Virus record (IMG/VR): IMGVR_UViG_3300042147_000020
Coordinates: 174,800-238,799 of that record
Strand: one strand, 5' to 3'
Length of the DNA: 64,000 bases
The notes beneath the pieces are model-generated. The model was not told the DNA's origin and ran no database searches. It saw only the letters and a list, made by a program, of their open reading frames with translations. Of this stretch, positions 6,788 to 64,000 are shown one piece after another. How positions within the stretch are numbered: position 1 is the first letter of the stretch; each line of letters begins with the position of its first letter. The position numbers and the translations under genes were made by a program.

Positions 6788-6799
6788 TGGAATCTATAC

Positions 6800-40440: not shown

Positions 40441-42948
40441 ATGATTAGAGAGATGATCAAGTTTGACGGTTCCAGCGAACCCTTCATTGCCGAGAAGGCC
40501 AAGAAGTGGAGCCAGTGGGCAGGTCGTAAACTCGGCAACCGTGTGGATTGGGCTAGCATCCTCCTCGATGCGGTCAATGAGTGTCCTCCGGTCCTGAGCA
40601 CTCAAGAGTTCCAGGAAAAGCTGGTTGACGTCACTTTGCGTGGCGAGAGTTGGGCACACTACCTGATGGCAGGTAAGCTGTATGCCCCACTGATCATGAA
40701 AAAGACCTTCGGACAGACTGTACCGACTGTACGTGAACTCCACTTGTCGCTGGCCGAGAAAGGCTATATGTACAAGCTGGACTACTCGGAAGCTGAATAC
40801 GCCGAAGTAGAAAAGCTGATCCAGCACAAGAAAGACCAGACTTACCCGCATTTCCGCAGCGAATACATCTACAAGAAGTACGCTCTGCAAAACCGTATCG
40901 GCTCTGAGCGCAATGTCTACGAGACACCACAGTTCGTGTACATGCGTATGGCCATGGCTCTCTCTGAAGAGCAGCCGCGTGAACGTCGTATGACTGACGT
41001 TGCCAAGTTCTACGAGCACTTGTCGGACGCTCGTATCAATGCCCCGACTCCAAACTACGTGAACCTGGGTACTCCTCTGCGTGGTTTCGCCTCTTGCTGC
41101 ATTTACAGCAACGAAGACACCGCTGCCTCGATCGGTATCGGTCTACACATTGCTTACACCATGACCTACATGTCTGCTGGTTGCGGTACTCACCTGAACA
41201 CTCGCTCGCTGGGTGACGCCGTTCGTGGTGGCATGATCAAACACCAAGGTAAACTCCCATACGTCCGTGCTACCAAGGCGATGGTTGAGGCCAACCTGCA
41301 AAACGGGCGTGGTGGTGCTGACACGCTGACCTACAGCATGTTCGATCCTGAAAACGAAACCATGCTGCAACTCCAGAACCCGATGTCGGTGGAAGAGAAG
41401 CAGATCCGTGGTATCGACTACTCGGTCACTGTGAGCAAGTTCATCGCTCGCTTCGCTGGTGCCAAGGGCAAGCTGTTCAAGTTCAACTGCTTCACGGCTC
41501 CTGACCTGTACGAAGCCTTCTACTCGGCAGACTTCGCCAAGTTCGAAGAGCTGTACGCCAAGTATGAAGCTGATCCACTTTTCGTCAAGGAGTACTTCAA
41601 CGCTCGTGAGCTGGTACTGGTAGCTCTGACTGAAGCTCTGGAAACCGGTCGTTACTACGTGACCTGGGCTGACGAGATGAATCGTCACACCCCGTTCTAC
41701 GATTCGATCTTCGCTTCCAACCTGTGCCAAGAGATCATGCTACCTCAGCGTGGTTATCGCCACATGATGGACCTGTACTCCAGCTCGGCTGTGGGTTACA
41801 TCAAGCTGACCACTACTGACGGCAACCGCATCAAGCTGGATGCACCGCAGAAGGTCTGGGTAGATCGTGCTCCGGCGGCAAACGCTGGGCCTGGACGTAT
41901 CGGTCGTCAAGCCATTGCTGCGATCGAGTTGGGTCCTGATGAATCGTTCCGCACCGTCAAGAACGGCCTGACCTACAAAGTCGCCACTATTGACGAGATC
42001 AAGCACGAGCCAGAAGTGGCTATGTGTAACATCGGTGGTGTGGTTCCAGCCAACATCGAAAGCGACGAGCAGTGGGCAGAAGTTGCTTACTACACCTTGC
42101 TGATGATCGACATCTGTATCCACAAGGCCGAATACGAACTACCACACATCGGGTTCACCTCGAAGGCACGTATGAACGCCGGTGTTGGTCTGATGGGTGT
42201 TGCTACCTGGATGGCCAAGAACAATTACAAGTATAGCAGTCAAGAAGGTAAGAACGCTCTGTTCCACCTCGACGAAACGCACATGTACCACCTGATCACT
42301 CAGTCGATCAAGTTGGGCAAAGAGCGTGGCAATGCTGAATGGATGCACCGTACCGCTTGGCCAGAAGGTTACCTACCGCAAGACAGTGCTAACCAGAACG
42401 TACTCGAACTGGTAACGGTGGGTCCTGCTCGTGATTGGGCTCCGGTTCGTCAAGACCTGATCGACAACGAAGGCATGCGCTTCTCTTGCGTCAACTCCCA
42501 CATGCCGGGTGAGTCCAGCTCGAAAGCTGCTGGTCAACCAAACGGTCGTTACCCAGTGCGTGACGTTGTGATGACCAAGACCGACAACGGCATTGTGTCG
42601 CGTTGGGCTGCTCCTGAGGGCGACCTGTGGGGTGATCGTTACGAGATCGCATGGGACGTTCCACCAGATGACCAGATCGACAGCTACGCCGTCGGCCAGT
42701 ACTGGTGTGACCAAGGGATGTCGGCAGACCAATGGCGGCGTTTGCCACAAGGTGAGACTGTAGGTTCGGCTGAACTGCTGAAAGGCTTCTTCCGCATGAC
42801 CAAATACGGGTTCAAGTCTCGTTACTACTACAACACTCTGACCACCGAAGCCAAAGTTCTGAGCAACGGTGAGATCGTGATGGTTGAAGTGCGTAACACC
42901 GACAAGGCTCCTGAAGCTGACTGCGGCGCTGGTGGCTGCAAAATGTAA
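40441..42948 (+). CDS. nrdA: Ribonucleotide reductase class Ia alpha subunit
   Basis: ATP-cone-like N-terminus, FASCC, SNLCQE, AMCNIGG, RYYYN, C-terminal CGAGGC. Confidence 0.95.
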   Translation: MIREMIKFDGSSEPFIAEKAKKWSQWAGRKLGNRVDWASILLDAVNECPPVLSTQEFQEKLVDVTLRGESWAHYLMAGKLYAPLIMKKTFGQTVPTVRELHLSLAEKGYMYKLDYSEAEYAEVEKLIQHKKDQTYPHFRSEYIYKKYALQNRIGSERNVYETPQFVYMRMAMALSEEQPRERRMTDVAKFYEHLSDARINAPTPNYVNLGTPLRGFASCCIYSNEDTAASIGIGLHIAYTMTYMSAGCGTHLNTRSLGDAVRGGMIKHQGKLPYVRATKAMVEANLQNGRGGADTLTYSMFDPENETMLQLQNPMSVEEKQIRGIDYSVTVSKFIARFAGAKGKLFKFNCFTAPDLYEAFYSADFAKFEELYAKYEADPLFVKEYFNARELVLVALTEALETGRYYVTWADEMNRHTPFYDSIFASNLCQEIMLPQRGYRHMMDLYSSSAVGYIKLTTTDGNRIKLDAPQKVWVDRAPAANAGPGRIGRQAIAAIELGPDESFRTVKNGLTYKVATIDEIKHEPEVAMCNIGGVVPANIESDEQWAEVAYYTLLMIDICIHKAEYELPHIGFTSKARMNAGVGLMGVATWMAKNNYKYSSQEGKNALFHLDETHMYHLITQSIKLGKERGNAEWMHRTAWPEGYLPQDSANQNVLELVTVGPARDWAPVRQDLIDNEGMRFSCVNSHMPGESSSKAAGQPNGRYPVRDVVMTKTDNGIVSRWAAPEGDLWGDRYEIAWDVPPDDQIDSYAVGQYWCDQGMSADQWRRLPQGETVGSAELLKGFFRMTKYGFKSRYYYNTLTTEAKVLSNGEIVMVEVRNTDKAPEADCGAGGCKM

Positions 42949-43007
42949 TACTGGTTGGGCGTTCTGGGGAGCGCCCTTTCCTTTAATAGTCTTTAGAGAG
43001 TGTTCTC

Positions 43008-44174
43008 GTGACAGTACCAGTAATGATTCAAACGGGGTTTTCTAAAACTCCACCGCAGATTGATCCAGCCATCTTCAACACTAACAAAACGGATTACCAG
43101 AACACCAGCCTGTTGCTAGGGCAACCTGGGGGTTTGTTCGACACGGTGAATAAGCAGTTTCCACAAGTCTGGAAGTTGTACAAGACTGTGAAGTCACTCG
43201 ATTGGGATGAACTAGAGATCCCGATGTCTTCTTGTAAGGCTGAGTTCAAGTCTCTGCCTCGCACCAAATCCCAAAAGATGATCAAGTCTCTGGCTTGGCA
43301 ATGGGAAGCTGACTCTGTTGCATCTCGCAGCATCAGTCACATCGTCAGCCTGTTCAACCCGGCTCCAGAACTATGGGCCGCTTGGCAGCGTATCTCTGAC
43401 CAAGAAGTGATCCACGCGGCGACCTACTCCGAGATCGTTCGGGCTAGCTTCGACAACCCTCGTGAAGTCCTCGACAAGATCCTGGAAGTTACCGAGGCCA
43501 TGCAACGCTTGGAAACGGTTGCAATAGAGATGCGATGGATTCGTGAGCGTGGCTTGCGTTTCCAACTGGGTGAATTCCCGGCTGACCAAGAAACCTACAA
43601 CGCAGCGTTCATGTTTGCGTTCGTGATGTTTGTACTGGAACGTTTGCAGTTCATGGCATCGTTCGGTGTAACCTTCGCATTGGCCGCTGAAGACCTCTTC
43701 ATCCCGATCTGCAAGATGGTACAGAAGATCGCACAAGACGAGTACGAGACTCACTGTGCGTTGGACTTCGCTGTCCTGCAACACGAGATGACAACTGAGC
43801 GTGGGCAGATTGCTTACCAACAGTTGCGTCCTCGCATGAACCGTGTGTTGAACGAAGTCATCGCCTGTGAACTGAACTGGTCGGACTTCGTGTACTGGGA
43901 CGAGGAAACTGAAACCTACGTCGAAGACCTGAAGTACTGTTCCCGTGCTCAGCTCAAAGACTCCGTCCTGTTCCATGCAACCTACGTGTCTCGTTCGATG
44001 CGTTTGGACATGGAGTACCCGCAAGTCGAGAACCTGCCGCTCCACTACATGAAGACCTGGATGAACATGGGTGACACCCAACCTTCACCACAGGAACAAG
44101 CTAACGCTCAGTACAAGGTAAACGTCGTTGTTCGCGATGACGAAGACGTGGACTTCGATGTCTCTGGTTTCTAA
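43008..44174 (+). CDS. nrdB: Ribonucleotide reductase class Ia beta subunit
   Basis: WEADS, EVIHAATY (radical Tyr), LERLQFMASF, QDEYETH, SPQEQ. Confidence 0.92.
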   Translation: MTVPVMIQTGFSKTPPQIDPAIFNTNKTDYQNTSLLLGQPGGLFDTVNKQFPQVWKLYKTVKSLDWDELEIPMSSCKAEFKSLPRTKSQKMIKSLAWQWEADSVASRSISHIVSLFNPAPELWAAWQRISDQEVIHAATYSEIVRASFDNPREVLDKILEVTEAMQRLETVAIEMRWIRERGLRFQLGEFPADQETYNAAFMFAFVMFVLERLQFMASFGVTFALAAEDLFIPICKMVQKIAQDEYETHCALDFAVLQHEMTTERGQIAYQQLRPRMNRVLNEVIACELNWSDFVYWDEETETYVEDLKYCSRAQLKDSVLFHATYVSRSMRLDMEYPQVENLPLHYMKTWMNMGDTQPSPQEQANAQYKVNVVVRDDEDVDFDVSGF

Positions 44175-54577: not shown

Positions 54578-55111
54578 TTACTTACGAAGCCAGCTCAGGA
54601 ATCGAGTCCACAGAGTCAGTTCAGGCATCGCTTGGATCTCTTCAGGTGGGGTCGTGGTTTCTACAGCCACCAACTCGTCAGTAGGAATACCCCAAGGGTT
54701 TTCCCCATCACGAGACTTCATCATGATTGGCTTCCAGAACTTACACGCCAGATCCGGGATGTTGTCGAAGTTGGTGAAGCCTAGGTGAATGACCGAAGCG
54801 TCACGACGAGCAGAGCCATCGCAGACCATCATCACCCGCTCACCGTTCTCACCACACCAACCCATGGCCCGAGAGGCACTACCGTTGTCTGTGTTCCAAC
54901 TCCCAGCGATCAGTCCTTCACGCTGTTCGAACTCGTTTACAAAGCTTTGGAACAGCTCAGTGAAGCGACCCTTGGACAGACGGTACACAACCACGAACTG
55001 GAAGCGCCCAGTCATCTGACGCAGGGTTAGAGGATGTTTGATCATTACTGCTCTTCGCAACTCATCCTCCAAAATCACTTCCCCGATTATATCTCTTTGC
55101 ATTGTGTTCAT
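54578..55111 (-). CDS. Hypothetical protein
   Basis: 177 aa; coupled overlap. Confidence 0.6.
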   Translation of the reverse strand: MNTMQRDIIGEVILEDELRRAVMIKHPLTLRQMTGRFQFVVVYRLSKGRFTELFQSFVNEFEQREGLIAGSWNTDNGSASRAMGWCGENGERVMMVCDGSARRDASVIHLGFTNFDNIPDLACKFWKPIMMKSRDGENPWGIPTDELVAVETTTPPEEIQAMPELTLWTRFLSWLRK

Positions 55112-55515
55112 AGTGGGGTATCCGGGTCCTTAATTGCCTTAGCCACCGCTTCATTATAAAGCGCTTCCATTTCCGGGGTGCGTTCTAACTCGTAGTCACA
55201 GTAACGGATTGTCCCTACCTGCTCAGGCGTAGCAGCACGCTCAGCAGGGAACTTGAGGATCTTCTCGAGAATGGCGTTGTCCCCATTACGATCAGCCGAC
55301 CATAAAGCAATGCTGTGCTCAGCATTGGGAACATTAACATTCGCCTCGATGTCGATCATTTGGATGCCACAGCGATCACAGAAGGCTTGGTACTCACGCA
55401 TGAAGTAGCCACGCAGGACAGTCGGTACCACCCATAGAGAGCCAGCTTTATTGAGGTTCAGTCCCCAAGTATGTTCGACCTTACGTTTACCGAGATAGAA
55501 CTTAGTCTTACGCAT
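55108..55515 (-). CDS. Hypothetical protein
   Basis: 135 aa; coupled overlap. Confidence 0.6.
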   Translation of the reverse strand: MRKTKFYLGKRKVEHTWGLNLNKAGSLWVVPTVLRGYFMREYQAFCDRCGIQMIDIEANVNVPNAEHSIALWSADRNGDNAILEKILKFPAERAATPEQVGTIRYCDYELERTPEMEALYNEAVAKAIKDPDTPL

Positions 55516-55948
55516 AACGACACCCCACGACCTCTACGCTTGGATAAAGAATCCCCGCCTTGCGGACTTCATCGGTTTTGATACTCCGACCAAACACCAT
55601 CGCTGGTGCAGTGAAGGCTGCACCCTCAGGTATCGGTGACAGACCCAGTTCTGTCTTGTCGAAGAGCTTGAACTCAGGATACTTCTCCAACAACCAGCGC
55701 CAGCCGTTGGTGTAGAGTTGCTGCTTGATAGCCAGAGTCTCTAAACCTTTGGGTGTAACCAACAATACCTCACGATCACTGTACTGCACGTACCGGTAGT
55801 CGCAATAGTCGTCAATCGCAATGTTGTCAGCGACGAAGTACTGGACAGACTTCAGGTTTGCCCGCAACCACTTCGGTACACACGGATACAACCGAGCAGC
55901 TTTGAACTGTTTTCCCGGAGTAGGGAGCATTCTAAGATTAGCAGCCAT
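55508..55948 (-). CDS. Hypothetical protein
   Basis: 146 aa; SD AAGGA. Confidence 0.6.
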   Translation of the reverse strand: MAANLRMLPTPGKQFKAARLYPCVPKWLRANLKSVQYFVADNIAIDDYCDYRYVQYSDREVLLVTPKGLETLAIKQQLYTNGWRWLLEKYPEFKLFDKTELGLSPIPEGAAFTAPAMVFGRSIKTDEVRKAGILYPSVEVVGCRYA

Positions 55949-55975
55949 TACTACATTCCTTCTAAGGGGATGGGA

Positions 55976-56173
55976 TTAGTGGAACAGTTGGTACAACAGA
56001 TTGGCCAAGCAAATAACAATAAACACGCCAAGGCCAATCCTTAGCTTTATTTCGTTACGATATTCGTCCCGGCGAGCACGGGATTGATTGAGGAGGGGAT
56101 TATTCATCGGTCTTCTCACCACTCTGGCGAGGGAAGCACACCACAGTCTTATGGATCGTACCTTGACCTCCAC
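55976..56173 (-). CDS. Small membrane protein
   Basis: C-terminal TM IGLGVFIVICLANLLY; start uncertain. Confidence 0.4.
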   Translation of the reverse strand: MEVKVRSIRLWCASLARVVRRPMNNPLLNQSRARRDEYRNEIKLRIGLGVFIVICLANLLYQLFH

Positions 56174-56351
56174 GACGGTCTTTGACGACTACCCACTCGA
56201 CACCTTCTTTACGAGCATCGGCGCCCAGAACAGCGTGGGCGGTCCTGGTACAGCCCGGTTCGTCGGTGGTTTCAAAGGACGTGGAGGTTGTTGCGATCGT
56301 GCCGTTGAAGGTCACGGTGGCGGTCAGAATTACGTTCATTAGTAGTGGCAT
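56100..56351 (-). CDS. Small hypothetical protein
   Basis: 83 aa; SD AAGGA. Confidence 0.5.
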   Translation of the reverse strand: MPLLMNVILTATVTFNGTIATTSTSFETTDEPGCTRTAHAVLGADARKEGVEWVVVKDRRGGQGTIHKTVVCFPRQSGEKTDE

Positions 56352-56407
56352 TGTTTCTATCCTTTCTTAAGGGGCATAGTTGGGAGCCCGAAGGCTCCCA
56401 ACTGGAT

Positions 56408-57727
56408 TTACACGATAACGTGCGGGATGAAGCGTTCGTTCTTCCACGACAGAGTCGGGGATTCGAATTCACGGATACACAAGGTAGCCGCTGTGGAGTC
56501 CATCATGTCGTCACGGTCTTCGACAGCGTCGGGAACCATGAACATACCGATGATGAAGTTGTGACGACCTTCGACCTGACCCGGAGGACAGTACGCTTGG
56601 TAAACACAGTCATCGGTGTACGGACCTTCCGACTCGTGCACTAATTCGTTGTGATCACCGAAGATCTTGACGTTAGACGACATGCGACCAACTAGAGGCT
56701 TCTGGACGTACGAAAGACCGGACTTGATGAACGGTTCAGGTGACATGTAGGTAGCTAGGGTAGGAACGTCATCCCACGCGCAACCATAACCCGCTGGGTC
56801 AGATTCACGCAGGTAGGTGATGTAAGCCCAGATACCTTTGTTCGAAGCAAACCAACGCCACGCAGGCTCCAGGAAGGTTACGTTACCTGCCCAGTTAGCC
56901 CACTCTTTGTAACCTTGAGGGAAGTTCTCAACCATCTCTTCCCACGGAGACAAAGCAAAGACCACGTCCAGACGACGCTCACCGATGACCCACGGCTTAT
57001 CACGACAAGCGTGATCGTAGTCGATGTCTTCGAAGGTTGCGAACAGGGTGGTGTTGTTCTGACCCAAGATCTGAGCCAGCGTTTCAGCAGTCACCATGTC
57101 TTCAAAGCTGCGCTGTTCGAACAGTACACCGACAAAGCCTGGGACTTGACCCAGCTCTTCGAGTTCGTGGATCAGCGTAGGCCAGAACATGTTGAGTTGG
57201 TCTTCCTCGTCACCAGTGAACTGTTTGCACAGGTTGGTTTGAAGGTTGACCGATTCGAACAACATGGTCGGGGTATCGCCGTTGAACTCGTAGATCCCGG
57301 TCACCTTTTCAGTGACTGGATCAAACGCAGCATCGAAGCGACCGTACAACGACTGGCGAGCAGAACCGTGGTTACGGAATGTCCACTTGGCGTAGTCAAT
57401 GAAGTACGGGTGTTTACGCAGGAAGTCACAGCCCATGAAATCCATGATGGTCGCATGGTTCTCGTTGAACAGACGACCTACTGCGTCAACCAGTTGGGCG
57501 TAGGCGCGTTCGAACATCAGTTCCATCGGAGCACACGAGGCTTGACGGATGGTGTAGAACGGCATCGCATCTTGGTTCTTGATGAAGTAATCGAAGTAAT
57601 CGGTTACATCCGCTTTGAACTTGGCGTCTGCAATCGCGCCTTCACGATAAAAGCCTTGCGACCAAGGTAGCTCTTCAACCATGATTTGGTTAAGGTCGAA
57701 GCGGATCTTCTTTTTCAAACATTGCAT
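56408..57727 (-). CDS. Glutathionylspermidine-synthase-like ATP-grasp ligase (YgiC/YjfC family)
   Basis: YGRFD, YEFNGDTPTMLFES, LEPAW..FASNKG, YVQKPLVGRMSSNV, ERFIPH. Confidence 0.88.
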   Translation of the reverse strand: MQCLKKKIRFDLNQIMVEELPWSQGFYREGAIADAKFKADVTDYFDYFIKNQDAMPFYTIRQASCAPMELMFERAYAQLVDAVGRLFNENHATIMDFMGCDFLRKHPYFIDYAKWTFRNHGSARQSLYGRFDAAFDPVTEKVTGIYEFNGDTPTMLFESVNLQTNLCKQFTGDEEDQLNMFWPTLIHELEELGQVPGFVGVLFEQRSFEDMVTAETLAQILGQNNTTLFATFEDIDYDHACRDKPWVIGERRLDVVFALSPWEEMVENFPQGYKEWANWAGNVTFLEPAWRWFASNKGIWAYITYLRESDPAGYGCAWDDVPTLATYMSPEPFIKSGLSYVQKPLVGRMSSNVKIFGDHNELVHESEGPYTDDCVYQAYCPPGQVEGRHNFIIGMFMVPDAVEDRDDMMDSTAATLCIREFESPTLSWKNERFIPHVIV

Positions 57728-57729
57728 AC

Positions 57730-58335
57730 TTAACTACTCGCTGAACCGTGGGATGCTGCGCGTGCACTGCTACCGGACATCACGCCAGTAGAGCGGGAGG
57801 AAATGACGCTGCTGGTCATGCTGCTGCGGAAGCTGGGCGAGGAGCGCACAGAAGTCCGGGCTTGGTTCATCATCATCGTGGTGTTGGCAGAACTGGCAGA
57901 GTTCACGCGACGACGACGTTCCTCTTCAGCGTACGAGCTACTACTCGACGGCCTGTAACGCTGGGAGTAGTTGTTCATACCACCCATGCTGTTCATGGCT
58001 TGGGCTAGTAAGAAGCCGGTAGCCATACCGCCCACCAGAGGCCAGACCGAATCGCTGTTCTGACCAGACGCAGTTTCCTTCACGACGTGGATCTCTTTCT
58101 CACCCTTTTCGTTATAGGTGTAGTAGACGTCTTTGACCGACGGGTCTTTGGACTGGAGTTCGGCGAGGGTTTTCTTGCGATCTTCCTCATCGGACGCCAA
58201 GGTCTGACGTACTTGCTTCTGCGCTTCGTCGTCGACGTAAGCATCTGCTTCTGCGGCAGAAGGTTGGTCCGGTTCACAACCGGCAAGGAGGACGGTACTG
58301 GCCACCATGGCCAGAGCTAGTTTGGTTTTATCCAT
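57730..58335 (-). CDS. Lipoprotein with Ser/Gly/Met-rich C-terminal tail, partner of the GspS-like gene
   Basis: Signal peptide with lipobox LLAG-C; internal hydrophobic segment; low-complexity tail; 2 nt from the ligase start. Confidence 0.75.
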   Translation of the reverse strand: MDKTKLALAMVASTVLLAGCEPDQPSAAEADAYVDDEAQKQVRQTLASDEEDRKKTLAELQSKDPSVKDVYYTYNEKGEKEIHVVKETASGQNSDSVWPLVGGMATGFLLAQAMNSMGGMNNYSQRYRPSSSSSYAEEERRRRVNSASSANTTMMMNQARTSVRSSPSFRSSMTSSVISSRSTGVMSGSSARAASHGSASS

Positions 58336-58399
58336 GGATCGAAAAAGCCTTCTACTTTATTGTGGGAGTGGAGCGAGCCTAACCCCGCCCACCGGTTTA

Positions 58400-58678
58400 T
58401 TATGCGATTGGGGTACACGAGTCGATGGTGAAGAGGACCTTTTGGGGATCACCCTCAGCAAACTCACGAAGCTTCCCTATCACCACCGTGAGATCCAACT
58501 GACCTTGTGGTGTAGGGAACCAGCTCAACAACTGATCAACCTGACGTTGCGTTTCCTCAGGGTGATAGTCGATGTAGTGTTCCGGGGCCAGGTCCACCTT
58601 TGGCAATGGCTTACCGAAATCAAACACCGTCCCTGACGGAATATCGAACAACGCCCCGACGTTAAACGGCACCTTCAT
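58400..58678 (-). CDS. Hypothetical protein
   Basis: 92 aa; overlaps the thyA stop. Confidence 0.55.
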   Translation of the reverse strand: MKVPFNVGALFDIPSGTVFDFGKPLPKVDLAPEHYIDYHPEETQRQVDQLLSWFPTPQGQLDLTVVIGKLREFAEGDPQKVLFTIDSCTPIA

Positions 58679-60240
58679 ACCGCAGCCTTCGGGAACTTGA
58701 CCTTAGCAGTGGCTTTGTAGCCCACAACCTTGATGTCGTCGAGCGTGAAGTCAAACAGGTTCTTGACGTGCGGGTTGAGTTGGATGGTTGGGTGAGAATC
58801 GGGATGACCCTCGTGTTCCAACCACTCCAGCACACCAGGCCACTGATCTTCGTAGACGTGACAGTTACCGCCAACGTAAGTGAAGGTGTCAGTCGCCATA
58901 CCCACACACTGTGCGATCATGTGGGTCAGGATCTGGTACTGAACGATGTTGAACGGGTGACCCAGTGGGATGTCGTTACTGCGCATGTAGAGCAACGAAG
59001 ACAGCTTGCGAGTAGGAACACCAGCTTCGTCTAGGAACGCCAAGGTTTCTGGATGGTGCTTCATTTGGGTTTCGTGACGACGGTCGTCATGAGTAGCGGC
59101 CAACTGGATCGCTTCTAGAGACAGGTGCTCAAACCCAGCAGGCTTGAACGTACCTAGCCACTCCAGACGCTCACGGATCGACATCGGTACCGAGAAGAAC
59201 TGACACAGCGTGTGACAAGGACGCAAAGCCATTTCATCCAGCTCACCCACATTCCAAGCAGACAGGATAATGCCTCGATCGTCTGGTTTGGTACGGAGCA
59301 TGTCGATAACGTTTTGCAGTTGGTCAATCTTGCGACTAACAACCGCCACGCTACCGTTACACGCACCACTGGACAGGTCGTCTGGGGTCAGCAACATACC
59401 ACGGAATTCGTAGCCTTGTTGCTCCAGCTTGTCGGCGTCTTCACGACACACCACGCGAGTCTGTTCCCAACCACGCCACTGATGTTGGTAGATCCGTGGG
59501 AGTTCCCCGGCTATCAGTTCCTGACGAGGGATGTCCATTGCATCCATAGCCAGATGTGCATTGGTGAAACCGCCCTGGGGATCTTCCCCGATGAGGATAC
59601 CCTTTTCCTTCGCCATTGCTTTACGCACTTCGAAGCTGAGGTCGCGGTATTCTTCGGTACCCTTCTTGACCCACGAGTCCCAGATATTGACCTTGTGTTC
59701 TTTCAGGAAACGGATGTTGGTATCACCCGAGATCATCCAGACCAGTTCGACCTTGACGCCCTCGACCCAGGTATACTTCGAGGAGACCGCATGGACCTGA
59801 CCCATGGAGATGTCGTACGTGTGAGAAGCACCCACCACAGCACGGGAGTTGACGCCGGTACGAGTGGTATCCTCGACACCTTCTTCCATGATCCGCAGAA
59901 TCAGCTCGCGAACGTTGTCATCTACAGTAGGCTGACGGGCGACTAATCCAACGATCGCTTTGTGGATGCTGCTCGGGTTGAAGTCACGCAACAATGACTT
60001 GTTGCGGATCAGCTTAGCCGATACTTCAGGACGGAACTCGAACGGGATACGTTGGTTGTCCAATTCACACAACATGTCACCGACTTGCATCGGATCGGAC
60101 TTGTTACAAAGACCGGCCATGTAGTTACCGCTCAGGGAGAGTAACTGTACACGTTGGTCGAAGGTGTAGAAGTTCGACGAGTCGTGATCGGCGATCATGC
60201 GCTTTGCCGATTCGCGTTGTTGTTCATTTGGGAAAGTCAT
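58675..60240 (-). CDS. thyA: Thymidylate synthase with N-terminal extension and insertions
   Basis: DRTGV-like TRTGV, NIWDSW, YQHQWR, IILSAWN, LRPCH, YMRSND..LGHPFNIVQY, GNCHVY. Confidence 0.92.
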   Translation of the reverse strand: MTFPNEQQRESAKRMIADHDSSNFYTFDQRVQLLSLSGNYMAGLCNKSDPMQVGDMLCELDNQRIPFEFRPEVSAKLIRNKSLLRDFNPSSIHKAIVGLVARQPTVDDNVRELILRIMEEGVEDTTRTGVNSRAVVGASHTYDISMGQVHAVSSKYTWVEGVKVELVWMISGDTNIRFLKEHKVNIWDSWVKKGTEEYRDLSFEVRKAMAKEKGILIGEDPQGGFTNAHLAMDAMDIPRQELIAGELPRIYQHQWRGWEQTRVVCREDADKLEQQGYEFRGMLLTPDDLSSGACNGSVAVVSRKIDQLQNVIDMLRTKPDDRGIILSAWNVGELDEMALRPCHTLCQFFSVPMSIRERLEWLGTFKPAGFEHLSLEAIQLAATHDDRRHETQMKHHPETLAFLDEAGVPTRKLSSLLYMRSNDIPLGHPFNIVQYQILTHMIAQCVGMATDTFTYVGGNCHVYEDQWPGVLEWLEHEGHPDSHPTIQLNPHVKNLFDFTLDDIKVVGYKATAKVKFPKAAV

Positions 60241-60251
60241 TATTCCTCTCC

Positions 60252-60668
60252 TTAGAGGTAGATGTAAGCGCATTCGTTGTTGAGAATGTGGTCGAGCATC
60301 GACCGGCGATGTATGGCGATCTCGTCCTCGTTGTTATAGATGAAGCAGTCTTGCAGGATTTCAAGGAACGCTTCAATCCGACCCGGTTGTTCAGTTGGGT
60401 GATTAAAGAAGCTGACATGTACGGACGACTCGTGATCGGGTGGAATGTCCATGTCACGGTGATGCGGTGGGATCACATTGGAGATCACAATGATAGTCCC
60501 AGTGTTCTTTGCACGAGCAAAGCAGCAGAGCAGATGTTGAGGTGCCCCGGTTTCAGGATCAGTCAACTTCACGAAGTCACCCAAAGGAGCAACTTGACGG
60601 AATCCTTCAACGTTCAAAAACAACTGACGAACCCGGTTTGGAATCAACGTAGCTTCAGCTTTCAACAT
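60252..60668 (-). CDS. Hypothetical protein
   Basis: Likely start MLKAEA after the promoter-like motif. Confidence 0.5.
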   Translation of the reverse strand: MLKAEATLIPNRVRQLFLNVEGFRQVAPLGDFVKLTDPETGAPQHLLCCFARAKNTGTIIVISNVIPPHHRDMDIPPDHESSVHVSFFNHPTEQPGRIEAFLEILQDCFIYNNEDEIAIHRRSMLDHILNNECAYIYL

Positions 60669-60791: not shown

Positions 60792-62147
60792 TTACGAAGC
60801 CAGGTCGCTCAAACGTACAGCTTCTTCTTCAGCCGTAGGTTGTACTGAATCGCTGATGCGAACCAGTTCTTCAACTGCAACTTTCATCTGGTCGTCAGTA
60901 GTGCCGACTTCGCGGTGCAGTTCAGTCAACACCTTGGTTTCAGCCGAAGGATCGACTGGAAGCTGTGTTGGGATGCTGTCGATCTGGTCAATGATCGCCT
61001 GAGCGAATGCGTCAACCGATGGAGCAGGCTTGATGGTTTCTTTATAGATCTCGGTCAGGCGGTCGATCGTACCTTGTGGATCTGGATCTTCCGCGTCGAC
61101 GGTGAAGTACAACACACCGTCGGTACCACGAGACATGCCTTCCACGTCTTCAGGAACAGTGAATTGCATCACAGGTTCAGTCAGACCGCGACCGATGTCG
61201 CCTTCAGCCAAGAACGGGGCTTCGTCGATGTGGATCAGTTCTGGACATTCGCCACGCATACGCACTGGCTCTTCAGCACTACCCTCGGCCTCTGGTGCAG
61301 CTTCGTCGTGACCGTGTTCACCAACGAACATGGCATCTACCGCAGCAGCCGCTTTGGCAGCGTCGATGATTTCGATCTGAGCGCGGATGCACAGCTTCGA
61401 CCAGTTTTCGAAGTCGTACAGGGCGTTCTCTTCTGGCAGCTCGAGATCAGCGTCCAGTTCTTCCAGGGTACGGAAGCCGACGGTGATCAGCTCTTCTTCT
61501 TTGCAGAGAACTTCAACGCCTTCTGGCAGACCGATGGACATCACGACGCCGATGTGTTGCAGACCTACTGCGTCAGTGTCGTCGCGGATGAACGCTTCGT
61601 GACCGTAAGTGTACAGGTTGCCGGATTCAGCGTACTCGGTGAAGGACATACCGTTGAAGGTAGCTTCTTCGTCCAGTTCGGTGACCATGCAAGCCAACAG
61701 GCTTTCAGTGGTGTTGAACGACCAGTCGCTGTGGAAGCGTACCGACTCGGCTTCTGGATGACCACCCAGAGCTACGGAGAACTTCTGACCCAGTAGGTCT
61801 TCGCCGATCAGCTTGGTACGCTGGTAGACGAACAACTCGAGCGAGCCATCAGGACGCTGACGGTGGATCAGGATGTACGGGATAGGGTGACGGAAGTGAG
61901 GGTCTGCTTCCAGACGAGCACGTTGAGCCAGCAGAGTACCAGGCTTCAGGGCCTCCATACGCTCACGCAGGACGTCGCGGGTTGGGTCGGACATGGCTTC
62001 ATAGCCTTGAACCGGGAACGCAGCGTCAGCGGCATCACGGAAGAAGCCGAGGATGTTGGCCTTTTTGGCTTGGTCTTTCTTCGACACCACAGGGACGTCG
62101 GTTTCCAGACCAGCTTCGTCTGGGTGCACGTTGTTTGCTTCGGACAT
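60792..62147 (-). CDS. Nudix-fold hydrolase with long acidic C-terminal extension
   Basis: HPIPYILI, YQRT, SVALGGH, ELDEE, HIGVV. Confidence 0.7.
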   Translation of the reverse strand: MSEANNVHPDEAGLETDVPVVSKKDQAKKANILGFFRDAADAAFPVQGYEAMSDPTRDVLRERMEALKPGTLLAQRARLEADPHFRHPIPYILIHRQRPDGSLELFVYQRTKLIGEDLLGQKFSVALGGHPEAESVRFHSDWSFNTTESLLACMVTELDEEATFNGMSFTEYAESGNLYTYGHEAFIRDDTDAVGLQHIGVVMSIGLPEGVEVLCKEEELITVGFRTLEELDADLELPEENALYDFENWSKLCIRAQIEIIDAAKAAAAVDAMFVGEHGHDEAAPEAEGSAEEPVRMRGECPELIHIDEAPFLAEGDIGRGLTEPVMQFTVPEDVEGMSRGTDGVLYFTVDAEDPDPQGTIDRLTEIYKETIKPAPSVDAFAQAIIDQIDSIPTQLPVDPSAETKVLTELHREVGTTDDQMKVAVEELVRISDSVQPTAEEEAVRLSDLAS

Positions 62148-62756: not shown

Positions 62757-64000
62757 TTAAGCAGCACGCAGACGCGCACGGATTGTTTCCAGGTCGACAC
62801 GGTTGGTGAACTCACCGTTCTTGAAGACCGAACGCAATTCACCAGAACCTTCTTCCAGATCAGCGAAGGTCATTTCCTGCTCTTGTGCGAGGATGAAATC
62901 ACCAGCCTCGTCTTTCACAACACGCAGGAAGCCCTTAGCCGACTTCTTGGCGGTTTCGCCTTCGGTCGCTGGCGCTTTGTACAGGTCGATCAGAGTACCG
63001 CCCACGTCTACAGCAGTAGCCTTGATGGCCATGCCGAAGGTATCGCGGGTGTTGTACTGGTAAGTGTAGCTACCAATACCCAGGACCACGTTGCAGGAAG
63101 CGAAGTTCTTGCGAGCCAGCCGGCGCATGATTTCTTCGGTACGCTGAACGGTGATGCTGTCGCCGTAGATCAGACCGATGTGCTCATCGAGTACACGATA
63201 GTCGTTGTCGTTGACAGTACCGCCGAAGATCTCCCACAGGACTTCGATGGCACCCTTCTCTTCCGCCGACAGGGTGTGTGGAGTGATCAGGTAACCACCA
63301 ACCCAGTGACCTTCTTCGATGGACGCCAGTTCGCCAGCCTTACGACCAGAGAGCTTGTCTTCTGCAAGATAGATCTCACCACCGACCGCACGGAAGTAGA
63401 TCTTCTTCCGACGCTCGGTCAGGATGCCTTCGTGGTAGACCGAGTTGGTCATCAACACGATGGCTTCTGCTTCCGAGAAGACCTCCACACCACAGATGAT
63501 TTCAACAGGATCACCCGAGTCAGGACGCACGACCACTTTATTCAGGCCGGTGCTGTCTTTGGTACGTGCCATGATCTCTGGTTTGAGAGCAGGCAGTACG
63601 TCAGTCAGAACGCCCCAGAAGTTGAAGGAGTCACACACCAGCGAGCAACCGCCGTCTGGGTAGACTTCGGTGATCAGGCGGCGGATGAACTGCTTCTCGC
63701 CTTCCAAACGCAGCTCTTTGAACTCAGCTTCAGTCAGGTCAGGCAGGCCGTCGGCACGACGCTGGTGGATCATCGTGTGCAGGTTCGACAGGATGTTCGC
63801 AGTAGCCACGGCGTGTTCAGTAGCCGGGATAGTGCAAGCCACGAACTGGGTTTCTACGTTGGCACCGTAGTAGTCTTCGACATAGTCGATCGCTGTGATG
63901 GTGTCAGTACCGCAGAAGCTGGTCAAGTGAGCACTGTTCGAACGGCAGCCGTCTTCAGGTCCGCCAACGCCACGGTAGGCGAAGTCGTGACCTTGTACAG
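62757..64000 (-). CDS. nadV: Nicotinamide phosphoribosyltransferase, 5'-truncated
   Basis: HDFAYRG (read upstream of the ORF-track start), GTDT, IPATEH, VCDSFN, RPDSGDP, IYGDSIT, GIGSYTYQYNTRDT, KKSAKG. Confidence 0.92.
   Translation of the reverse strand, partial: VQGHDFAYRGVGGPEDGCRSNSAHLTSFCGTDTITAIDYVEDYYGANVETQFVACTIPATEHAVATANILSNLHTMIHQRRADGLPDLTEAEFKELRLEGEKQFIRRLITEVYPDGGCSLVCDSFNFWGVLTDVLPALKPEIMARTKDSTGLNKVVVRPDSGDPVEIICGVEVFSEAEAIVLMTNSVYHEGILTERRKKIYFRAVGGEIYLAEDKLSGRKAGELASIEEGHWVGGYLITPHTLSAEEKGAIEVLWEIFGGTVNDNDYRVLDEHIGLIYGDSITVQRTEEIMRRLARKNFASCNVVLGIGSYTYQYNTRDTFGMAIKATAVDVGGTLIDLYKAPATEGETAKKSAKGFLRVVKDEAGDFILAQEQEMTFADLEEGSGELRSVFKNGEFTNRVDLETIRARLRAA

What the first reader, a model, noticed from the sequence alone, without database searches (positions are those of the whole stretch)
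56408..58335. Captured ygiB-ygiC-like module: lipoprotein plus GspS-like ATP-grasp ligase
Seen: a lipobox protein with a Ser/Gly/Met-rich tail 2 nt upstream of a synthetase-only GspS-family gene. Established: E. coli ygiB-ygiC and yjfM-yjfC pair a lipoprotein with such a ligase, whose true substrate is unknown. Inference: a phage-borne envelope-associated peptide-ligation system, perhaps modifying the lipoprotein tail or polyamines; possible roles in membrane stress, exclusion or counter-defence.
Basis: partly seen in the sequence, partly recalled or inferred. Interest (0 to 1): 0.6.

Follow-up and report, generated by a model that had tools for sequence, protein, structure and literature searches.

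The report
Phage lipoprotein plus peptide-polyamine ligase pair
A jumbo phage carries a tightly linked gene pair, a secreted lipid-anchored protein with a conserved glycine/serine tail and a cytoplasmic ATP-dependent ligase related to E. coli's peptide-spermidine ligases; the pair recurs in many phages, and comparing them points to the tail as the ligase's long-sought natural substrate.

Summary
On the minus strand, a 201-aa lipobox protein (58335..57730) ends 2 nt before a 439-aa synthetase-only GSP_synth ATP-grasp gene (57727..56408). The window is the last 64 kb of a 239-kb IMG/VR jumbo-phage record.

The pair is real and conserved:
- The ligase lies directly downstream of the lipoprotein in 20 of 21 viral contigs fetched with the lipoprotein.
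- It is also paired in phiPMW, Lu11, HRDY3, the NoPa group, VPMCC14 and PhiW-14, and in one bacterial chromosome.

It is not a recent capture of ygiB-ygiC. The ligase sits in a deep, mostly phage-borne "long-form" clade. The lipoprotein is not DUF1190 by HMM and lacks DUF1190's four cysteines. Only the lipobox architecture and the C-terminal tail motif (usually ending Gly-Gly) are shared.

The ligase keeps all catalytic residues and the acidic pair of the GspS spermidine pocket. Its model matches YjfC. One related locus has an AdoMetDC-spermidine synthase fusion next to the pair.

Best reading: a YgiC/YjfC-type peptide-polyamine ligase module whose likely acyl substrate is the partner's tail. 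Substrate, topology and role in infection remain unproven. I rate it a new variant of a known kind, of moderate interest.

The parts
57730..58335 (-). Lipoprotein gene, 201 aa (P0001); member of PHROG 13808, a small and mostly phage-borne family
   Evidence: ORF. PHROG 13808 E 8.3e-37. No Pfam family. Only 125 cluster representatives at E<=1e-3 among 1.84 billion proteins.
58276..58335 (-). Signal peptide with lipobox L-A-G-C; the lipidated Cys20 codon is 58278..58276. The +2 residue is Glu.
   Evidence: Read from the sequence. L17, G19 and C20 are invariant. The +2 residue is Asp in 38 and Glu in 25 of 104 family members.
58051..58275 (-). Acidic extracytoplasmic domain (residues 21-95, net charge about -9): a long helix plus a three-stranded sheet, with the motif L-x-E-L-Q-x-K-D-P-x-V-K-D-V-Y-Y and no cysteines
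   Evidence: Alignments. AF2 model H27-63, E67-74, E80-87, E93-99 with pLDDT 93-96. Only weak PepSY/TseB-like shape matches. Unlike DUF1190, which has 4 invariant Cys.
57976..58050 (-). Gly/Met-rich hydrophobic segment (residues 96-120, SVWPLVGGMATGFLLAQAMNSMGGM). It is either a membrane-inserted hairpin or a transmembrane helix.
   Evidence: Kyte-Doolittle 19-residue maximum is 1.22 (family median 1.34). W98, P99, G103, G107, G118 and G119 are invariant. AF2 draws two short helices, 106-115 and 119-126, at lower confidence of 75-80.
57733..57975 (-). Basic Ser/Gly/Asn/Met-rich C-terminal part (residues 121-201, net +8). AF2 folds residues 131-179 back onto the N-terminal domain.
   Evidence: Composition and charge. 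The C-terminal part is net positive in 104 of 104 family members. AF2 gives E131-135, H137-165, H167-179 with pLDDT up to 96.
57733..57807 (-). Conserved flexible C-terminal tail motif (residues 177-201, ...SSRSTGVMSGSSARAASHGSASS). This is the only stretch alignable with DUF1190 proteins and the candidate acyl substrate of the ligase.
   Evidence: hhalign A2 against the DUF1190 alignment: 94.5% probability over query residues 177-194. The family C-terminus is GG in 61 and GS in 18 of 104. YgiB, YjfM, RSL1 ORF051 and the RAY, BIS47 and Merlin proteins end ...GG. Tail pLDDT is 55-68.
57728..57729 (-). 2-nt spacer between the lipoprotein stop codon and the ligase start codon (translational coupling is likely)
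   Evidence: Read from the sequence.
56408..57727 (-). ATP-grasp carboxylate-amine ligase, 439 aa, GSP_synth family, synthetase-only, 'long-form' phage clade
   Evidence: Pfam PF03738 E 8.8e-39. PHROG 6215 E 1.8e-101. PDB by sequence: YjfC 7uk6 E 1.9e-13, YgiC 7uk8 E 1e-10. AF2 pLDDT 92.3; Foldseek YjfC E 2.8e-25, TM 0.72/0.81. R130, D132, E147, N149, R348, R419 and E209/D210 are conserved. Clade with 100/100 support.
56378..56403 (-). GC-rich 11-bp hairpin with a UUCG loop, starting 5 nt after the ligase stop codon. It probably marks the transcript end or acts as a stabiliser. There is no U-tract.
   Evidence: Fold energy -24.4 kcal/mol, z -4.15, 0 of 200 shuffles as good. Unique in the window.

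Best explanation
This is a two-gene envelope module of the same kind as E. coli ygiB-ygiC and yjfM-yjfC, in a divergent and mainly phage-borne form.

Gene 1 encodes a lipoprotein. It is exported and lipid-anchored at Cys20. It has an acidic alpha/beta domain, a Gly/Met-rich hydrophobic segment that probably dips into a membrane, and a flexible basic Ser/Gly C-terminal tail.

Gene 2 is translationally coupled to gene 1. It encodes a cytoplasmic ATP-grasp ligase that (i) phosphorylates a peptide C-terminal carboxylate with ATP and (ii) lets a polyamine amine (spermidine or putrescine) attack the acyl-phosphate. The product is a peptidyl-polyamine amide, the chemistry of GspS and of YgiC/YjfC.

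The acyl substrate I think most likely is the C-terminal tail of the partner lipoprotein, modified in the cytoplasm before or during export. The envelope protein would then carry a polyamine-capped C-terminus that is cationic and no longer a free carboxylate.

Shown here: gene anatomy, conserved linkage, family and fold membership of the ligase, intact catalytic and amine-pocket residues, and a tail motif shared across different lipoprotein families.

Inferred: polyamine as the amine, the tail as the acyl substrate, and the timing of modification.

Unknown: the benefit to the phage. Candidates are stabilising or re-tuning the envelope during a long jumbo-phage infection, protection of the tail from tail-specific protease, and polyamine handling.

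Rough odds:
- active carboxylate-amine ligase: 0.8
- polyamine as the amine: 0.6
- partner tail as the physiological substrate: 0.3-0.35
For: Linkage:
- The ligase lies directly downstream on the same strand in 20 of 21 IMG/VR loci fetched with the lipoprotein alone.
- The pair also occurs in phiPMW, Lu11, NoPa, VPMCC14, HRDY3 and PhiW-14.
- It occurs in a phage-like region of a Pseudomonas syringae assembly and in the Corticimicrobacter populi chromosome.
- Independent phage lineages pair a genuine DUF1190 lipoprotein with a short-form ligase: Aeromonas LAh_6 and Ralstonia RSL1.

Ligase:
- Pfam, PHROG and PDB matches.
- AF2 model with pLDDT 92.3; best Foldseek matches are YjfC, GspS and YgiC.
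- R130, D132, E147, N149, R348 and R419 are invariant.
- E209/D210 align with GspS E391/E392, which line the spermidine pocket (PMC6272389).
- YgiC and YjfC have published peptide-spermidine ligase activity (cited in PMC11762307 and PMC12568646).

Polyamine link:
- An AdoMet decarboxylase-spermidine synthase fusion lies next to the pair in L040.
- Bacterial GspS-like ATP-grasp genes are linked to polyamine genes and to DUF1190 (PMC11237479).

Tail as the common denominator:
- The phage family and DUF1190 have different N-terminal domains (no Cys against four invariant Cys). They align only at the C-terminal motif, at 94.5% hhalign probability.
- 17 of 116 family members hit DUF1190 weakly, and no other Pfam family recurs.
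- The C-terminus is GG or GS in 79 of 104 members. A C-terminal Gly carboxylate is what GspS activates in glutathione (PMC6272389).

Complex prediction of the ligase with lipoprotein residues 121-201 gave weak support:
- ipSAE 0.43 (runs 0.43, 0.49, 0.37); best control 0.00.
- The mark was reached by 58 of 80 solved complexes and 2 of 110 mismatched pairs.
- At 0.60 or under it was reached by only 7 of those 80 and by both mismatches that passed.
- The runs agree in at least 51% of contacts. Partner pLDDT is 41-42.
Against: - No biochemical data exist for any phage member. The substrate assignment is inference.
- Topology problem: the ligase has no signal peptide and needs ATP, so it is cytoplasmic. 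The AF2 model folds residues 27-179 of the lipoprotein into one compact domain, so the tail would be extracytoplasmic after export. Modification would have to precede translocation, which is unusual.
- E. coli YgiB rises 3-4-fold in a mutant lacking tail-specific protease (Tsp) (PMC13435647).
- The window's own protein ends ...SASS rather than GG, the only such case of 104.
- The complex score is weak and the partner's fold is uncertain.
- Many Enterobacterales phages carry a DUF1190 lipoprotein with no ligase gene at all. Some Aeromonas T4-like phages carry a ligase with no lipoprotein directly upstream. One viral locus (L035) has a lipoprotein variant without a ligase within 4 kb. The partnership is therefore not obligatory in cis.
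- The held part of this phage's genome has no SpeD or SpeE.
Confidence: 0.45

Rival explanations
1. The ligase works on soluble substrates only. It conjugates host polyamines to a small peptide or metabolite and so buffers or depletes free polyamines during infection, for DNA condensation or packaging balance, or to blunt polyamine-dependent host responses. The lipoprotein is a separate envelope factor (membrane stabiliser, exclusion protein or sensor). It is co-transcribed with the ligase but is not its substrate.
For: - YgiC and YjfC ligate free peptides to spermidine in vitro (as cited).
- The amine-pocket acidic pair is conserved.
- A SpeD-SpeE fusion lies next to the pair in L040.
- Ligase-only phages exist (Aeromonas phage 31).
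- Lipoprotein-only phages exist (RAY, BIS47, Merlin).
- AF2 places the tail on the extracytoplasmic side, away from a cytoplasmic enzyme.
Against: - This reading does not explain why two unrelated lipoprotein N-domains share just the C-terminal tail wherever a ligase is the neighbour.
- It does not explain the near-perfect adjacency, 20 of 21 loci with a 2-nt spacer here.
- The complex prediction passed its controls, though weakly.
Confidence: 0.3
2. The lipoprotein is bitopic. Its lipidated N-terminal domain lies outside, residues 96-118 span the inner membrane, and the basic C-terminal part stays in the cytoplasm. There it docks, regulates or is modified by the ligase, giving a trans-membrane signalling or anchoring device.
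For: - The charge dipole is universal. The part before the hydrophobic segment is net negative (median -9.5) and the part after it net positive (median +10) in 104 of 104 members. This fits the positive-inside rule.
- Asp at +2, the classical inner-membrane retention signal of E. coli, occurs in 38 of 104 members.
- It solves the compartment problem for a cytoplasmic ATP-dependent enzyme.
- Weak complex support for the ligase with residues 121-201.
Against: - The hydrophobicity of the segment is only moderate (1.22 here, family median 1.34).
- AF2 confidently (pLDDT up to 96) pairs strand 131-135 with the N-terminal sheet and packs helix 137-165 against helix 27-63. That puts both halves on one side and explains the charge dipole as an intramolecular acidic-basic helix pair.
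- YgiB is described as an outer-membrane lipoprotein and rises in a mutant of the tail-specific protease Tsp.
Confidence: 0.15
3. The ligase belongs to a DNA hypermodification pathway. It attaches a polyamine or amino acid to a modified pyrimidine, as suggested by the neighbouring thymidylate-synthase homologue and by its presence in the putrescinyl-thymine phage PhiW-14.
For: - A 532-aa thymidylate-synthase homologue lies 340 nt upstream.
- PhiW-14 encodes a member of the same ligase clade.
Against: - In PhiW-14, as in the other loci, the ligase follows a lipoprotein of this family, there with a small 2-TM ORF in between.
- Other loci have no thymidylate-synthase neighbour. phiPMW and NoPa have NAMPT and Prs; C. 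populi has ExbBD and bactofilin.
- The closest characterised enzymes act on peptide carboxylates, not nucleotides.
- No nucleotide-binding additions appear in the model.
Confidence: 0.05
4. The pair is a recent horizontal capture of a host ygiB-ygiC or yjfM-yjfC operon.
For: Same gene order and overall architecture as the E. coli operons. Some other phages (LAh_6, RSL1) do carry genuine DUF1190 plus a short-form ligase that groups with YgiC/YjfC.
Against: - The window ligase is 25% identical to YgiC.
- It lies in a 27-row clade (100/100 support) separated by long branches from YgiC, YjfC and GspS.
- The lipoprotein does not hit DUF1190 and lacks its four cysteines.
- The phage-type lipoprotein was found in 1 of 301 Burkholderiales genomes sampled.
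- Most contigs carrying the family are 50-314-kb phage-like contigs.
Confidence: 0.04

Closest known systems
E. coli YjfM-YjfC and YgiB-YgiC (DUF1190 lipoprotein plus peptide-spermidine ligase; PDB 7uk6, 7uk8)
   Same: - Gene order: lipoprotein first, ligase immediately after.
- Lipobox.
- Gly/Met-rich hydrophobic stretch.
- Basic Ser/Gly tail with the ...S-R-G-G-F-G...S-S-A-R...G-G type motif.
- Synthetase-only ATP-grasp ligase with the same fold, the same catalytic residues and the E/D pair of the amine pocket.
- GSH-specific residues replaced in the same way (C338 not kept, D610 to Arg).
   Different: - The ligase is only about 25% identical and lies in a separate deep clade with a longer N-terminal part (439 aa against 386-392 aa).
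- The lipoprotein N-terminal domain is a different, Cys-free helix-plus-sheet domain and is not recognised by the DUF1190 HMM.
- The context is a phage auxiliary-metabolism region (thymidylate synthase, NAMPT, RNR), not tolC or a PspA-type operon.
E. coli bifunctional glutathionylspermidine synthetase/amidase (Gss/GspSA; PDB 2io7-2ioa)
   Same: ATP-grasp synthetase fold (Foldseek E about 1e-22). Conserved R316/D318/E330/N332/R538/R598 equivalents and E391/E392 equivalents.
   Different: - No N-terminal CHAP amidase domain.
- The equivalog model scores 28.6 bits against a cut-off of 882.
- GSH-contacting positions differ (C338 to Met, D610 to Arg), and D387/D389 are not kept.
- It should therefore not be named glutathionylspermidine synthase.
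Phage 'glutathionylspermidine synthase' genes already annotated (phiPMW gp102, Lu11 gp271, PhiW-14 gp91, PHROG 6215)
   Same: Same ligase clade and same upstream lipoprotein.
   Different: Published notes call the function unclear and do not mention the lipoprotein partner (PMC5587285). The partner, PHROG 13808, is annotated as unknown function.
YgiB-like DUF1190 lipoproteins of Enterobacterales phages (Moon/Merlin, RAY, GAP32, BIS47 and others)
   Same: Phage-borne lipoprotein with the same hydrophobic stretch and ...RGGFG...GG tail.
   Different: These are genuine DUF1190 proteins with the four cysteines. RAY, BIS47 and Merlin have no ligase gene anywhere in the genome. They may depend on a host ligase; that was not tested.

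Membership tests
GSP_synth / GspS-type ATP-grasp ligases (Pfam PF03738) | Match to the family HMM above the curated cut-off | tested here: met
   134.2 bits against a cut-off of 29.3, E 8.8e-39. The whole-genome scan gives the same single hit.
GSP_synth / GspS-type ATP-grasp ligases (Pfam PF03738) | GspS/YjfC-like three-dimensional fold | tested here: met
   AF2 pLDDT 92.3, pTM 0.92. Foldseek: YjfC 7uk6 E 2.8e-25 (TM 0.72/0.81), GspS 2io8 E 3.5e-23, YgiC 7uk8 E 7.6e-20.
GSP_synth / GspS-type ATP-grasp ligases (Pfam PF03738) | Catalytic Arg/Asp/Glu/Asn set for ATP-Mg and acyl-phosphate (GspS R316, D318, E330, N332, R538, R598; the residue list is from my own knowledge of the GspS structure papers) | tested here: met
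   The window protein has R130, D132, E147, N149, R348 and R419. All are invariant in 54 clade members and in all 18 aligned family members.
GSP_synth / GspS-type ATP-grasp ligases (Pfam PF03738) | ATP-dependent carboxylate-amine ligation activity | not testable with these tools
   Needs an enzyme assay.
Bifunctional glutathionylspermidine synthetase/amidase (NCBIfam NF007801 equivalog) | Full-length match including the N-terminal CHAP amidase domain | tested here: not met
   28.6 bits against a cut-off of 882. Only residues 335-390 match. No other Pfam domain is present.
Bifunctional glutathionylspermidine synthetase/amidase (NCBIfam NF007801 equivalog) | Glutathione-site residues (for example C338, D610) and all four acidic residues of the spermidine pocket (D387, D389, E391, E392) | tested here: not met
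   C338 to M155, D610 to R432, D387 to Q205, D389 to S207. Only E391/E392 are kept, as E209/D210. Pocket residues are from PMC6272389.
YgiC/YjfC peptide-spermidine ligases (orthologous group) | Groups with YgiC/YjfC in a phylogeny | tested here: not met
   The window protein sits in a separate 27-row clade (100/100). YgiC, YjfC, RSL1 and the Aeromonas phage ligases group with GspS on the other side of a long branch. Caveat: the tool warns of long-branch effects.
YgiC/YjfC peptide-spermidine ligases (orthologous group) | Same substitutions relative to GspS, and a lipoprotein with the DUF1190-type tail directly upstream | tested here: met
   T152, T154, L259 and R432 match YgiC and YjfC at those positions, and M155, like their Ser, replaces GspS C338. 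The upstream partner carries the tail motif.
YgiC/YjfC peptide-spermidine ligases (orthologous group) | Peptide-spermidine ligase activity | not testable with these tools
   Known for the E. coli enzymes only, from the literature.
DUF1190 (Pfam PF06693; YgiB/YjfM) | Match to the family HMM above the cut-off (22 bits) | tested here: not met
   No hit for the window protein even at E<=10 or in a six-frame scan of the phage record. 17 of 116 relatives hit weakly, best E 1.5e-5. NoPa: 14.1 bits, E 0.06, over the C-terminal half only.
DUF1190 (Pfam PF06693; YgiB/YjfM) | Four invariant cysteines in the N-terminal extracytoplasmic domain | tested here: not met
   DUF1190 alignment: C77, C87, C111 and C118 are invariant. 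The phage family has 0 Cys after the lipobox in 99 of 104 members.
DUF1190 (Pfam PF06693; YgiB/YjfM) | C-terminal S-R-G-G-F/Y-G...S-S-A-R...G-G tail after a Gly/Met-rich hydrophobic stretch | tested here: met
   Profile-profile hit at 94.5% probability, E 7.6e-8, restricted to this motif. Tails are shown. The window copy itself ends SASS, not GG.
Bacterial lipoproteins (SPase II substrates) | Lipobox [LVI][ASTVI][GAS]C at the end of a signal peptide | tested here: met
   L-A-G-C20 after a K-rich n-region and a 12-residue h-region. Invariant in homologues.
Bacterial lipoproteins (SPase II substrates) | Actual lipidation and signal-peptide cleavage; final membrane | not testable with these tools
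   Needs labelling, globomycin treatment and fractionation.

The most novel reading that the evidence does not exclude
The ligase amidates the C-terminal carboxylate of its partner lipoprotein with a polyamine before export. This would create a previously undescribed protein modification, a C-terminal peptidyl-spermidine or peptidyl-putrescine cap on an envelope lipoprotein. The same reaction would be the long-sought physiological function of E. coli YgiC/YjfC with YgiB/YjfM. Large phages would deploy their own version, or only the lipoprotein where the host supplies the ligase, to remodel the host envelope during infection.
Probability: 0.25. Interest if true: 0.8.

Novelty: new variant of a known kind. 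Interest (0 to 1): 0.55.

Why it matters
- YgiC and YjfC are widespread bacterial enzymes whose physiological peptide substrate is still unknown. YgiB sits in the tolC operon and affects envelope fitness.
- The phage modules act as a natural experiment. Two unrelated lipoprotein N-domains have kept only the same C-terminal tail next to the ligase. That narrows the search for the substrate to a short, synthesisable peptide.
- The modules are available in tractable systems: the Pseudomonas putida phages Lu11, phiPMW and NoPa.
- If the tail is the substrate, this would define a new protein C-terminal polyamine modification.
- It would also explain why more than 150 large phages carry YgiB-like lipoproteins, 138 records with genuine DUF1190 and about 20 with this variant.
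- If the tail is not the substrate, the pair remains an auxiliary polyamine-metabolism or envelope gene set in jumbo phages. That would be useful annotation but not surprising.
- In either case the usual database name, 'glutathionylspermidine synthase', is wrong for these phage genes.

Tried and rejected
- Megablast of 55000-60500 against 50,697 phage records found no match, so there is no close sequenced isolate.
- A direct DUF1190 HMM test of the window protein and of the whole phage record gave no hit.
- hhalign of the family against the single YgiB sequence aligned only the signal peptide and lipobox, which is uninformative. It needed a DUF1190 alignment.
- My first model was a transmembrane helix at 96-118 with a cytoplasmic tail. 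The AF2 model folds both halves into one domain, so I demoted it to a rival.
- Fold searches with the lipoprotein model found nothing significant in PDB (best E 0.3) and only TM 0.3 PepSY/TseB-like shapes in the ESM Atlas. No fold assignment is claimed.
- A search of the phage's own record for spermidine synthase and AdoMet decarboxylase found none. The record is 86% complete.
- The hairpin after the ligase gene was checked as a repeated regulatory element. It is unique in the window.
- The region upstream of the lipoprotein gene has no significant structure (z 0.19). There is no convincing sigma-70-like promoter near the pair.
- 'Recent capture from a host' was rejected on the tree and on rarity in bacteria.
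- The Pederick et al. 2023 paper could not be read because it is not held. Its content is cited only through papers that cite it.


Full report
**1. What is there**

The window is the last 64 kb of a 238,799-bp IMG/VR virus record estimated to be 86% complete, so this is a jumbo phage. It has no close sequenced relative at the DNA level.

The region from about 44.6 kb to the window end is a long array of minus-strand genes. Two of them make up the finding.

- ORF 58335..57730 encodes 201 aa.
- ORF 57727..56408 encodes 439 aa.
- The first ends with TAA at 57732..57730, and the second starts with ATG at 57727, leaving 2 nt between them.
- Five nucleotides after the second stop codon there is an 11-bp GC-rich hairpin with a UUCG loop (-24.4 kcal/mol, z -4.15). 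It is unique in the window.
- Recognisable genes nearby are auxiliary-metabolism genes. These are a 532-aa thymidylate-synthase homologue at 60273..58675, a NAMPT at the window end, and ribonucleotide reductase subunits at 40.4-44.2 kb.

**2. The ligase**

The 439-aa protein matches only Pfam GSP_synth (134 bits against a cut-off of 29.3) and PHROG 6215 (E 1.8e-101).

It lacks the CHAP amidase domain of the bifunctional E. coli enzyme. The Gss equivalog model scores 28.6 bits against a cut-off of 882.

Its nearest solved relatives by sequence are E. coli YjfC (7uk6, E 1.9e-13) and YgiC (7uk8, E 1e-10). An AlphaFold2 model built on 54 homologues is confident (pLDDT 92.3, pTM 0.92). Its best Foldseek matches are YjfC (E 2.8e-25, TM 0.72/0.81), GspS and YgiC.

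In an alignment with GspS, YgiC, YjfC and 14 other family members:
- The ATP-Mg/acyl-phosphate residues are all present as R130, D132, E147, N149, R348 and R419. The list of GspS positions comes from my own knowledge of the GspS structures.
- These residues are invariant across the 54-member clade alignment.
- GspS Glu391/Glu392 lie in the spermidine pocket, and Glu391 is key for spermidine binding (PMC6272389). They correspond to E209/D210, as in YgiC and YjfC.
- The other two acidic pocket residues and the glutathione-side residues are replaced: D387 to Q, D389 to S, C338 to M and D610 to R.

The protein therefore looks like an active carboxylate-amine ligase that keeps an amine (polyamine) site but not the glutathione site. 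YgiC and YjfC lack Gsp synthetase activity and have been shown to be peptide-spermidine ligases whose physiological substrate is unknown. This comes from Sui 2012 and Pederick 2023, as summarised in PMC11762307 and PMC12568646. I could not read the primary paper.

**3. The lipoprotein**

The 201-aa protein begins MDKTKLALAMVASTVLLAG-C, a standard lipobox. L17, G19 and C20 are invariant among 19 homologues.

It hits PHROG 13808 (unknown function, E 8e-37) and no Pfam family.

A profile search of 1.84 billion cluster representatives found only 125 relatives. Most come from contigs of 50-314 kb. This is a small, mainly phage-borne family.

The sequence has four parts:
- an acidic region (residues 21-95, net -9) with the motif LxELQxKDPxVKDVYY;
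- a Gly/Met-rich hydrophobic stretch (residues 96-120, Kyte-Doolittle maximum 1.22);
- a basic Ser/Asn/Met-rich region (net +8);
- a tail ...SSRSTGVMSGSSARAASHGSASS.

Across 104 family representatives with a lipobox:
- The first part is always net negative (median -9.5) and the last always net positive (median +10).
- The C-terminus is GG in 61 and GS in 18.
- The +2 residue after the lipid-modified Cys is Asp in 38 and Glu in 25.

An AlphaFold2 model on 116 sequences is unexpectedly confident (pLDDT 83.6, pTM 0.69). It folds residues 27-179 into one unit: helix 27-63, strands 67-74/80-87/93-99, short helices 106-115 and 119-126, strand 131-135 and helices 137-165/167-179. Only about the last 22 residues are left flexible.

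This model has no significant PDB match. It gives only weak PepSY/TseB-like shape matches.

**4. Relation to DUF1190 (YgiB/YjfM)**

The DUF1190 HMM does not detect the window protein. Even so, 17 of 116 family members hit it weakly (best E 1.5e-5), and no other Pfam family recurs. In the NoPa homologue the weak hit covers the hydrophobic stretch and the tail.

A profile-profile comparison against a DUF1190 alignment gives 94.5% probability (E 7.6e-8). It covers only 19 columns, the tail motif. That motif reads SxSxGxF..SSAR in phages and TVSRGGYGRSSSARG in YjfM.

The N-terminal domains are different. DUF1190 has four invariant cysteines. The phage family has none in 99 of 104 members.

The window protein is thus not a DUF1190 member by the family's own criteria. 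It shares the lipobox, the hydrophobic stretch and the tail.

**5. Linkage**

I fetched viral contigs with the lipoprotein profile alone and then looked for the ligase. The ligase lay immediately downstream on the same strand in 20 of 21 loci. The exception, L035, has a 349-aa variant of the lipoprotein.

In isolates the pair occurs in:
- Pseudomonas phages phiPMW, Lu11, HRDY3 and the NoPa group;
- Vibrio phage VPMCC14;
- Delftia phage PhiW-14.

In phiPMW, NoPa and PhiW-14, one or two tiny membrane ORFs lie between the two genes.

The pair also occurs in a phage-like region of a Pseudomonas syringae assembly. It occurs in an ordinary chromosomal context in Corticimicrobacter populi as well, next to ExbBD, bactofilin and an M23 peptidase. 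The phage-type lipoprotein was found in only 1 of 301 Burkholderiales genomes sampled, C. populi itself.

Other phage lineages pair a genuine DUF1190 lipoprotein with a short-form ligase:
- Aeromonas phage LAh_6, which also has a K+ channel, echoing the bacterial yjf-type operons described in PMC11237479.
- Ralstonia phage RSL1, whose ORF051 has a lipobox, cysteines and a ...ARGGFG...AGG tail.

The linkage is not universal:
- 138 phage records, mostly Enterobacterales phages, encode YgiB-like DUF1190 lipoproteins.
- Three that I checked in full (RAY, BIS47, Merlin) have no GSP_synth gene. They nevertheless keep the ...RGGFG...GG tail.
- Phage Moon's 'YgiB-like lipoprotein' was noted in print with its role unknown (PMC4319498).
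- Aeromonas T4-like phages have a ligase with no lipoprotein directly upstream.

**6. Origin**

In a maximum-likelihood tree of 33 ligases, the window protein falls in a 27-row clade with 100/100 support. That clade contains all the long-form phage enzymes and the few bacterial copies. Long branches separate it from the group holding YgiC, YjfC, RSL1, the Aeromonas phage ligases and GspS. The tool flags possible long-branch effects.

Identity to YgiC is 25%. Taken with the different N-terminal domain of the lipoprotein and its rarity in bacteria, this rules out a recent capture of ygiBC or yjfMC. The module is an old, separate, phage-centred variant.

**7. How it probably works**

The evidence supports an active ATP-grasp ligase of the YgiC/YjfC type.

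Polyamine as the amine is inferred from three things:
- the conserved E/D pair;
- the activity of the E. coli homologues;
- an AdoMet decarboxylase-spermidine synthase fusion gene divergently adjacent to the pair on a 155-kb phage-like contig, L040.

The window's own record has no such gene.

The most informative comparative fact is this. Wherever a ligase has a lipoprotein neighbour, the tail is conserved while the extracytoplasmic domain is not. The tail usually ends in Gly-Gly. A terminal Gly carboxylate is what GspS activates in glutathione (PMC6272389).

This points to the tail as the ligase's acyl substrate, or at least its docking site.

A complex prediction of the ligase with lipoprotein residues 121-201 gave weak support:
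- ipSAE 0.43 (runs 0.43, 0.49, 0.37) against a best control of 0.00.
- The mark was reached by 58 of 80 solved complexes and 2 of 110 mismatched pairs.
- At 0.60 or under it was reached by only 7 of those 80 and by both mismatches that passed.
- The runs agree in at least 51% of contacts, and the partner's pLDDT is 41-42.

The main difficulty is compartmentation, because the ligase must be cytoplasmic. There are two ways out.
- The tail is modified before or during Sec export. This is my preferred reading, because AF2 folds both halves of the lipoprotein together and E. coli YgiB rises in a tail-specific-protease mutant (PMC13435647).
- The hydrophobic stretch spans the inner membrane and leaves the basic part in the cytoplasm. 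This rival is supported by the universal negative/positive charge split and the frequent Asp at +2.

A third reading is that the ligase handles only soluble peptides and polyamines, and the lipoprotein is a functionally separate envelope factor.

What the phage gains is unknown. Envelope stabilisation, exclusion, protease protection of the tail and polyamine management are all open.

**8. Verdict**

- The database name 'glutathionylspermidine synthase' is not justified.
- The module is a new variant of a known kind (YgiB-YgiC/YjfM-YjfC). It is moderately interesting mainly because it turns the open question of the YgiC/YjfC substrate into a simple peptide-level experiment.
The reads tools were not used.

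Noticed in passing
window 58675-60273 (-): A 532-aa thymidylate-synthase homologue, about twice the usual length. The Pfam TS match is split into two stretches, with an N-terminal extension of about 110 aa and an internal insert. It could be a dUMP-modifying variant or an insert-bearing ThyA.
   Followed up: no
window 62757-63998 (-) and 60792-62147 (-); also L001 3229-4968 and L003 1832-3634: A NAMPT gene and a 451-aa PHROG 8902 protein with a Nudix-like box lie a few kb upstream of the pair. NAMPT plus PRPP synthetase also sit just upstream of the pair in phiPMW and NoPa. A PnuC NMN transporter precedes the DUF1190 gene in Klebsiella phage BIS47. The recurrence with NAD-salvage genes is unexplained.
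   Followed up: partly
window 56378-56403 (-): A perfect 11-bp GC-rich stem with a UUCG tetraloop starts 5 nt after the ligase stop codon (-24.4 kcal/mol, z -4.15). It has no U-tract and is unique in the window.
   Followed up: partly
L040 4573-6228 (-), next to the pair at 6303-8308: A 551-aa AdoMet decarboxylase-spermidine synthase fusion is divergently adjacent to the lipoprotein-ligase pair. It lies on a 155-kb phage-like contig from an Achromobacter denitrificans assembly.
   Followed up: partly
phage records hit (for example L044 2501-3118, L045 2501-3070, L046 2501-3079): 138 phage records, mainly Klebsiella, Erwinia, Cronobacter and Citrobacter phages including jumbo and T4-like ones, encode genuine YgiB-like DUF1190 lipoproteins. 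RAY, BIS47 and Merlin have no GSP_synth ligase anywhere in the genome, yet keep the ...RGGFG...GG tail.
   Followed up: partly
L012 1291-3424 (Aeromonas phage LAh_6): A three-gene set of two-pore K+ channel, DUF1190 lipoprotein and short-form ligase. It mirrors part of the bacterial PspA/yjf-type operon described in PMC11237479.
   Followed up: no
L001 5702-5842; L003 5664-6190; L006 3786-3980: One or two very small hydrophobic ORFs (46-90 aa, 1-2 predicted TM segments) lie between the lipoprotein and ligase genes in phiPMW, NoPa and PhiW-14. They are absent in the window and its close relatives.
   Followed up: no
L035 4001-5050: A 349-aa variant of the lipoprotein with a long Gln/Pro-rich insert and a different basic C-terminus. 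It has no ligase within 4 kb and is the only unlinked case among 21 viral loci.
   Followed up: no
L014 7387-9311 (Corticimicrobacter populi chromosome): The only clearly chromosomal copy of the long-form pair, sitting between an ExbB/ExbD cluster and a bactofilin gene followed by an M23 peptidase gene. It was the sole hit among 301 Burkholderiales genomes, which suggests phage-to-bacterium transfer.
   Followed up: partly
window 40441-44174 (+): Ribonucleotide reductase large (835 aa) and small (388 aa) subunit genes lie on the opposite strand to the minus-strand array that begins at about 44.6 kb.
   Followed up: no
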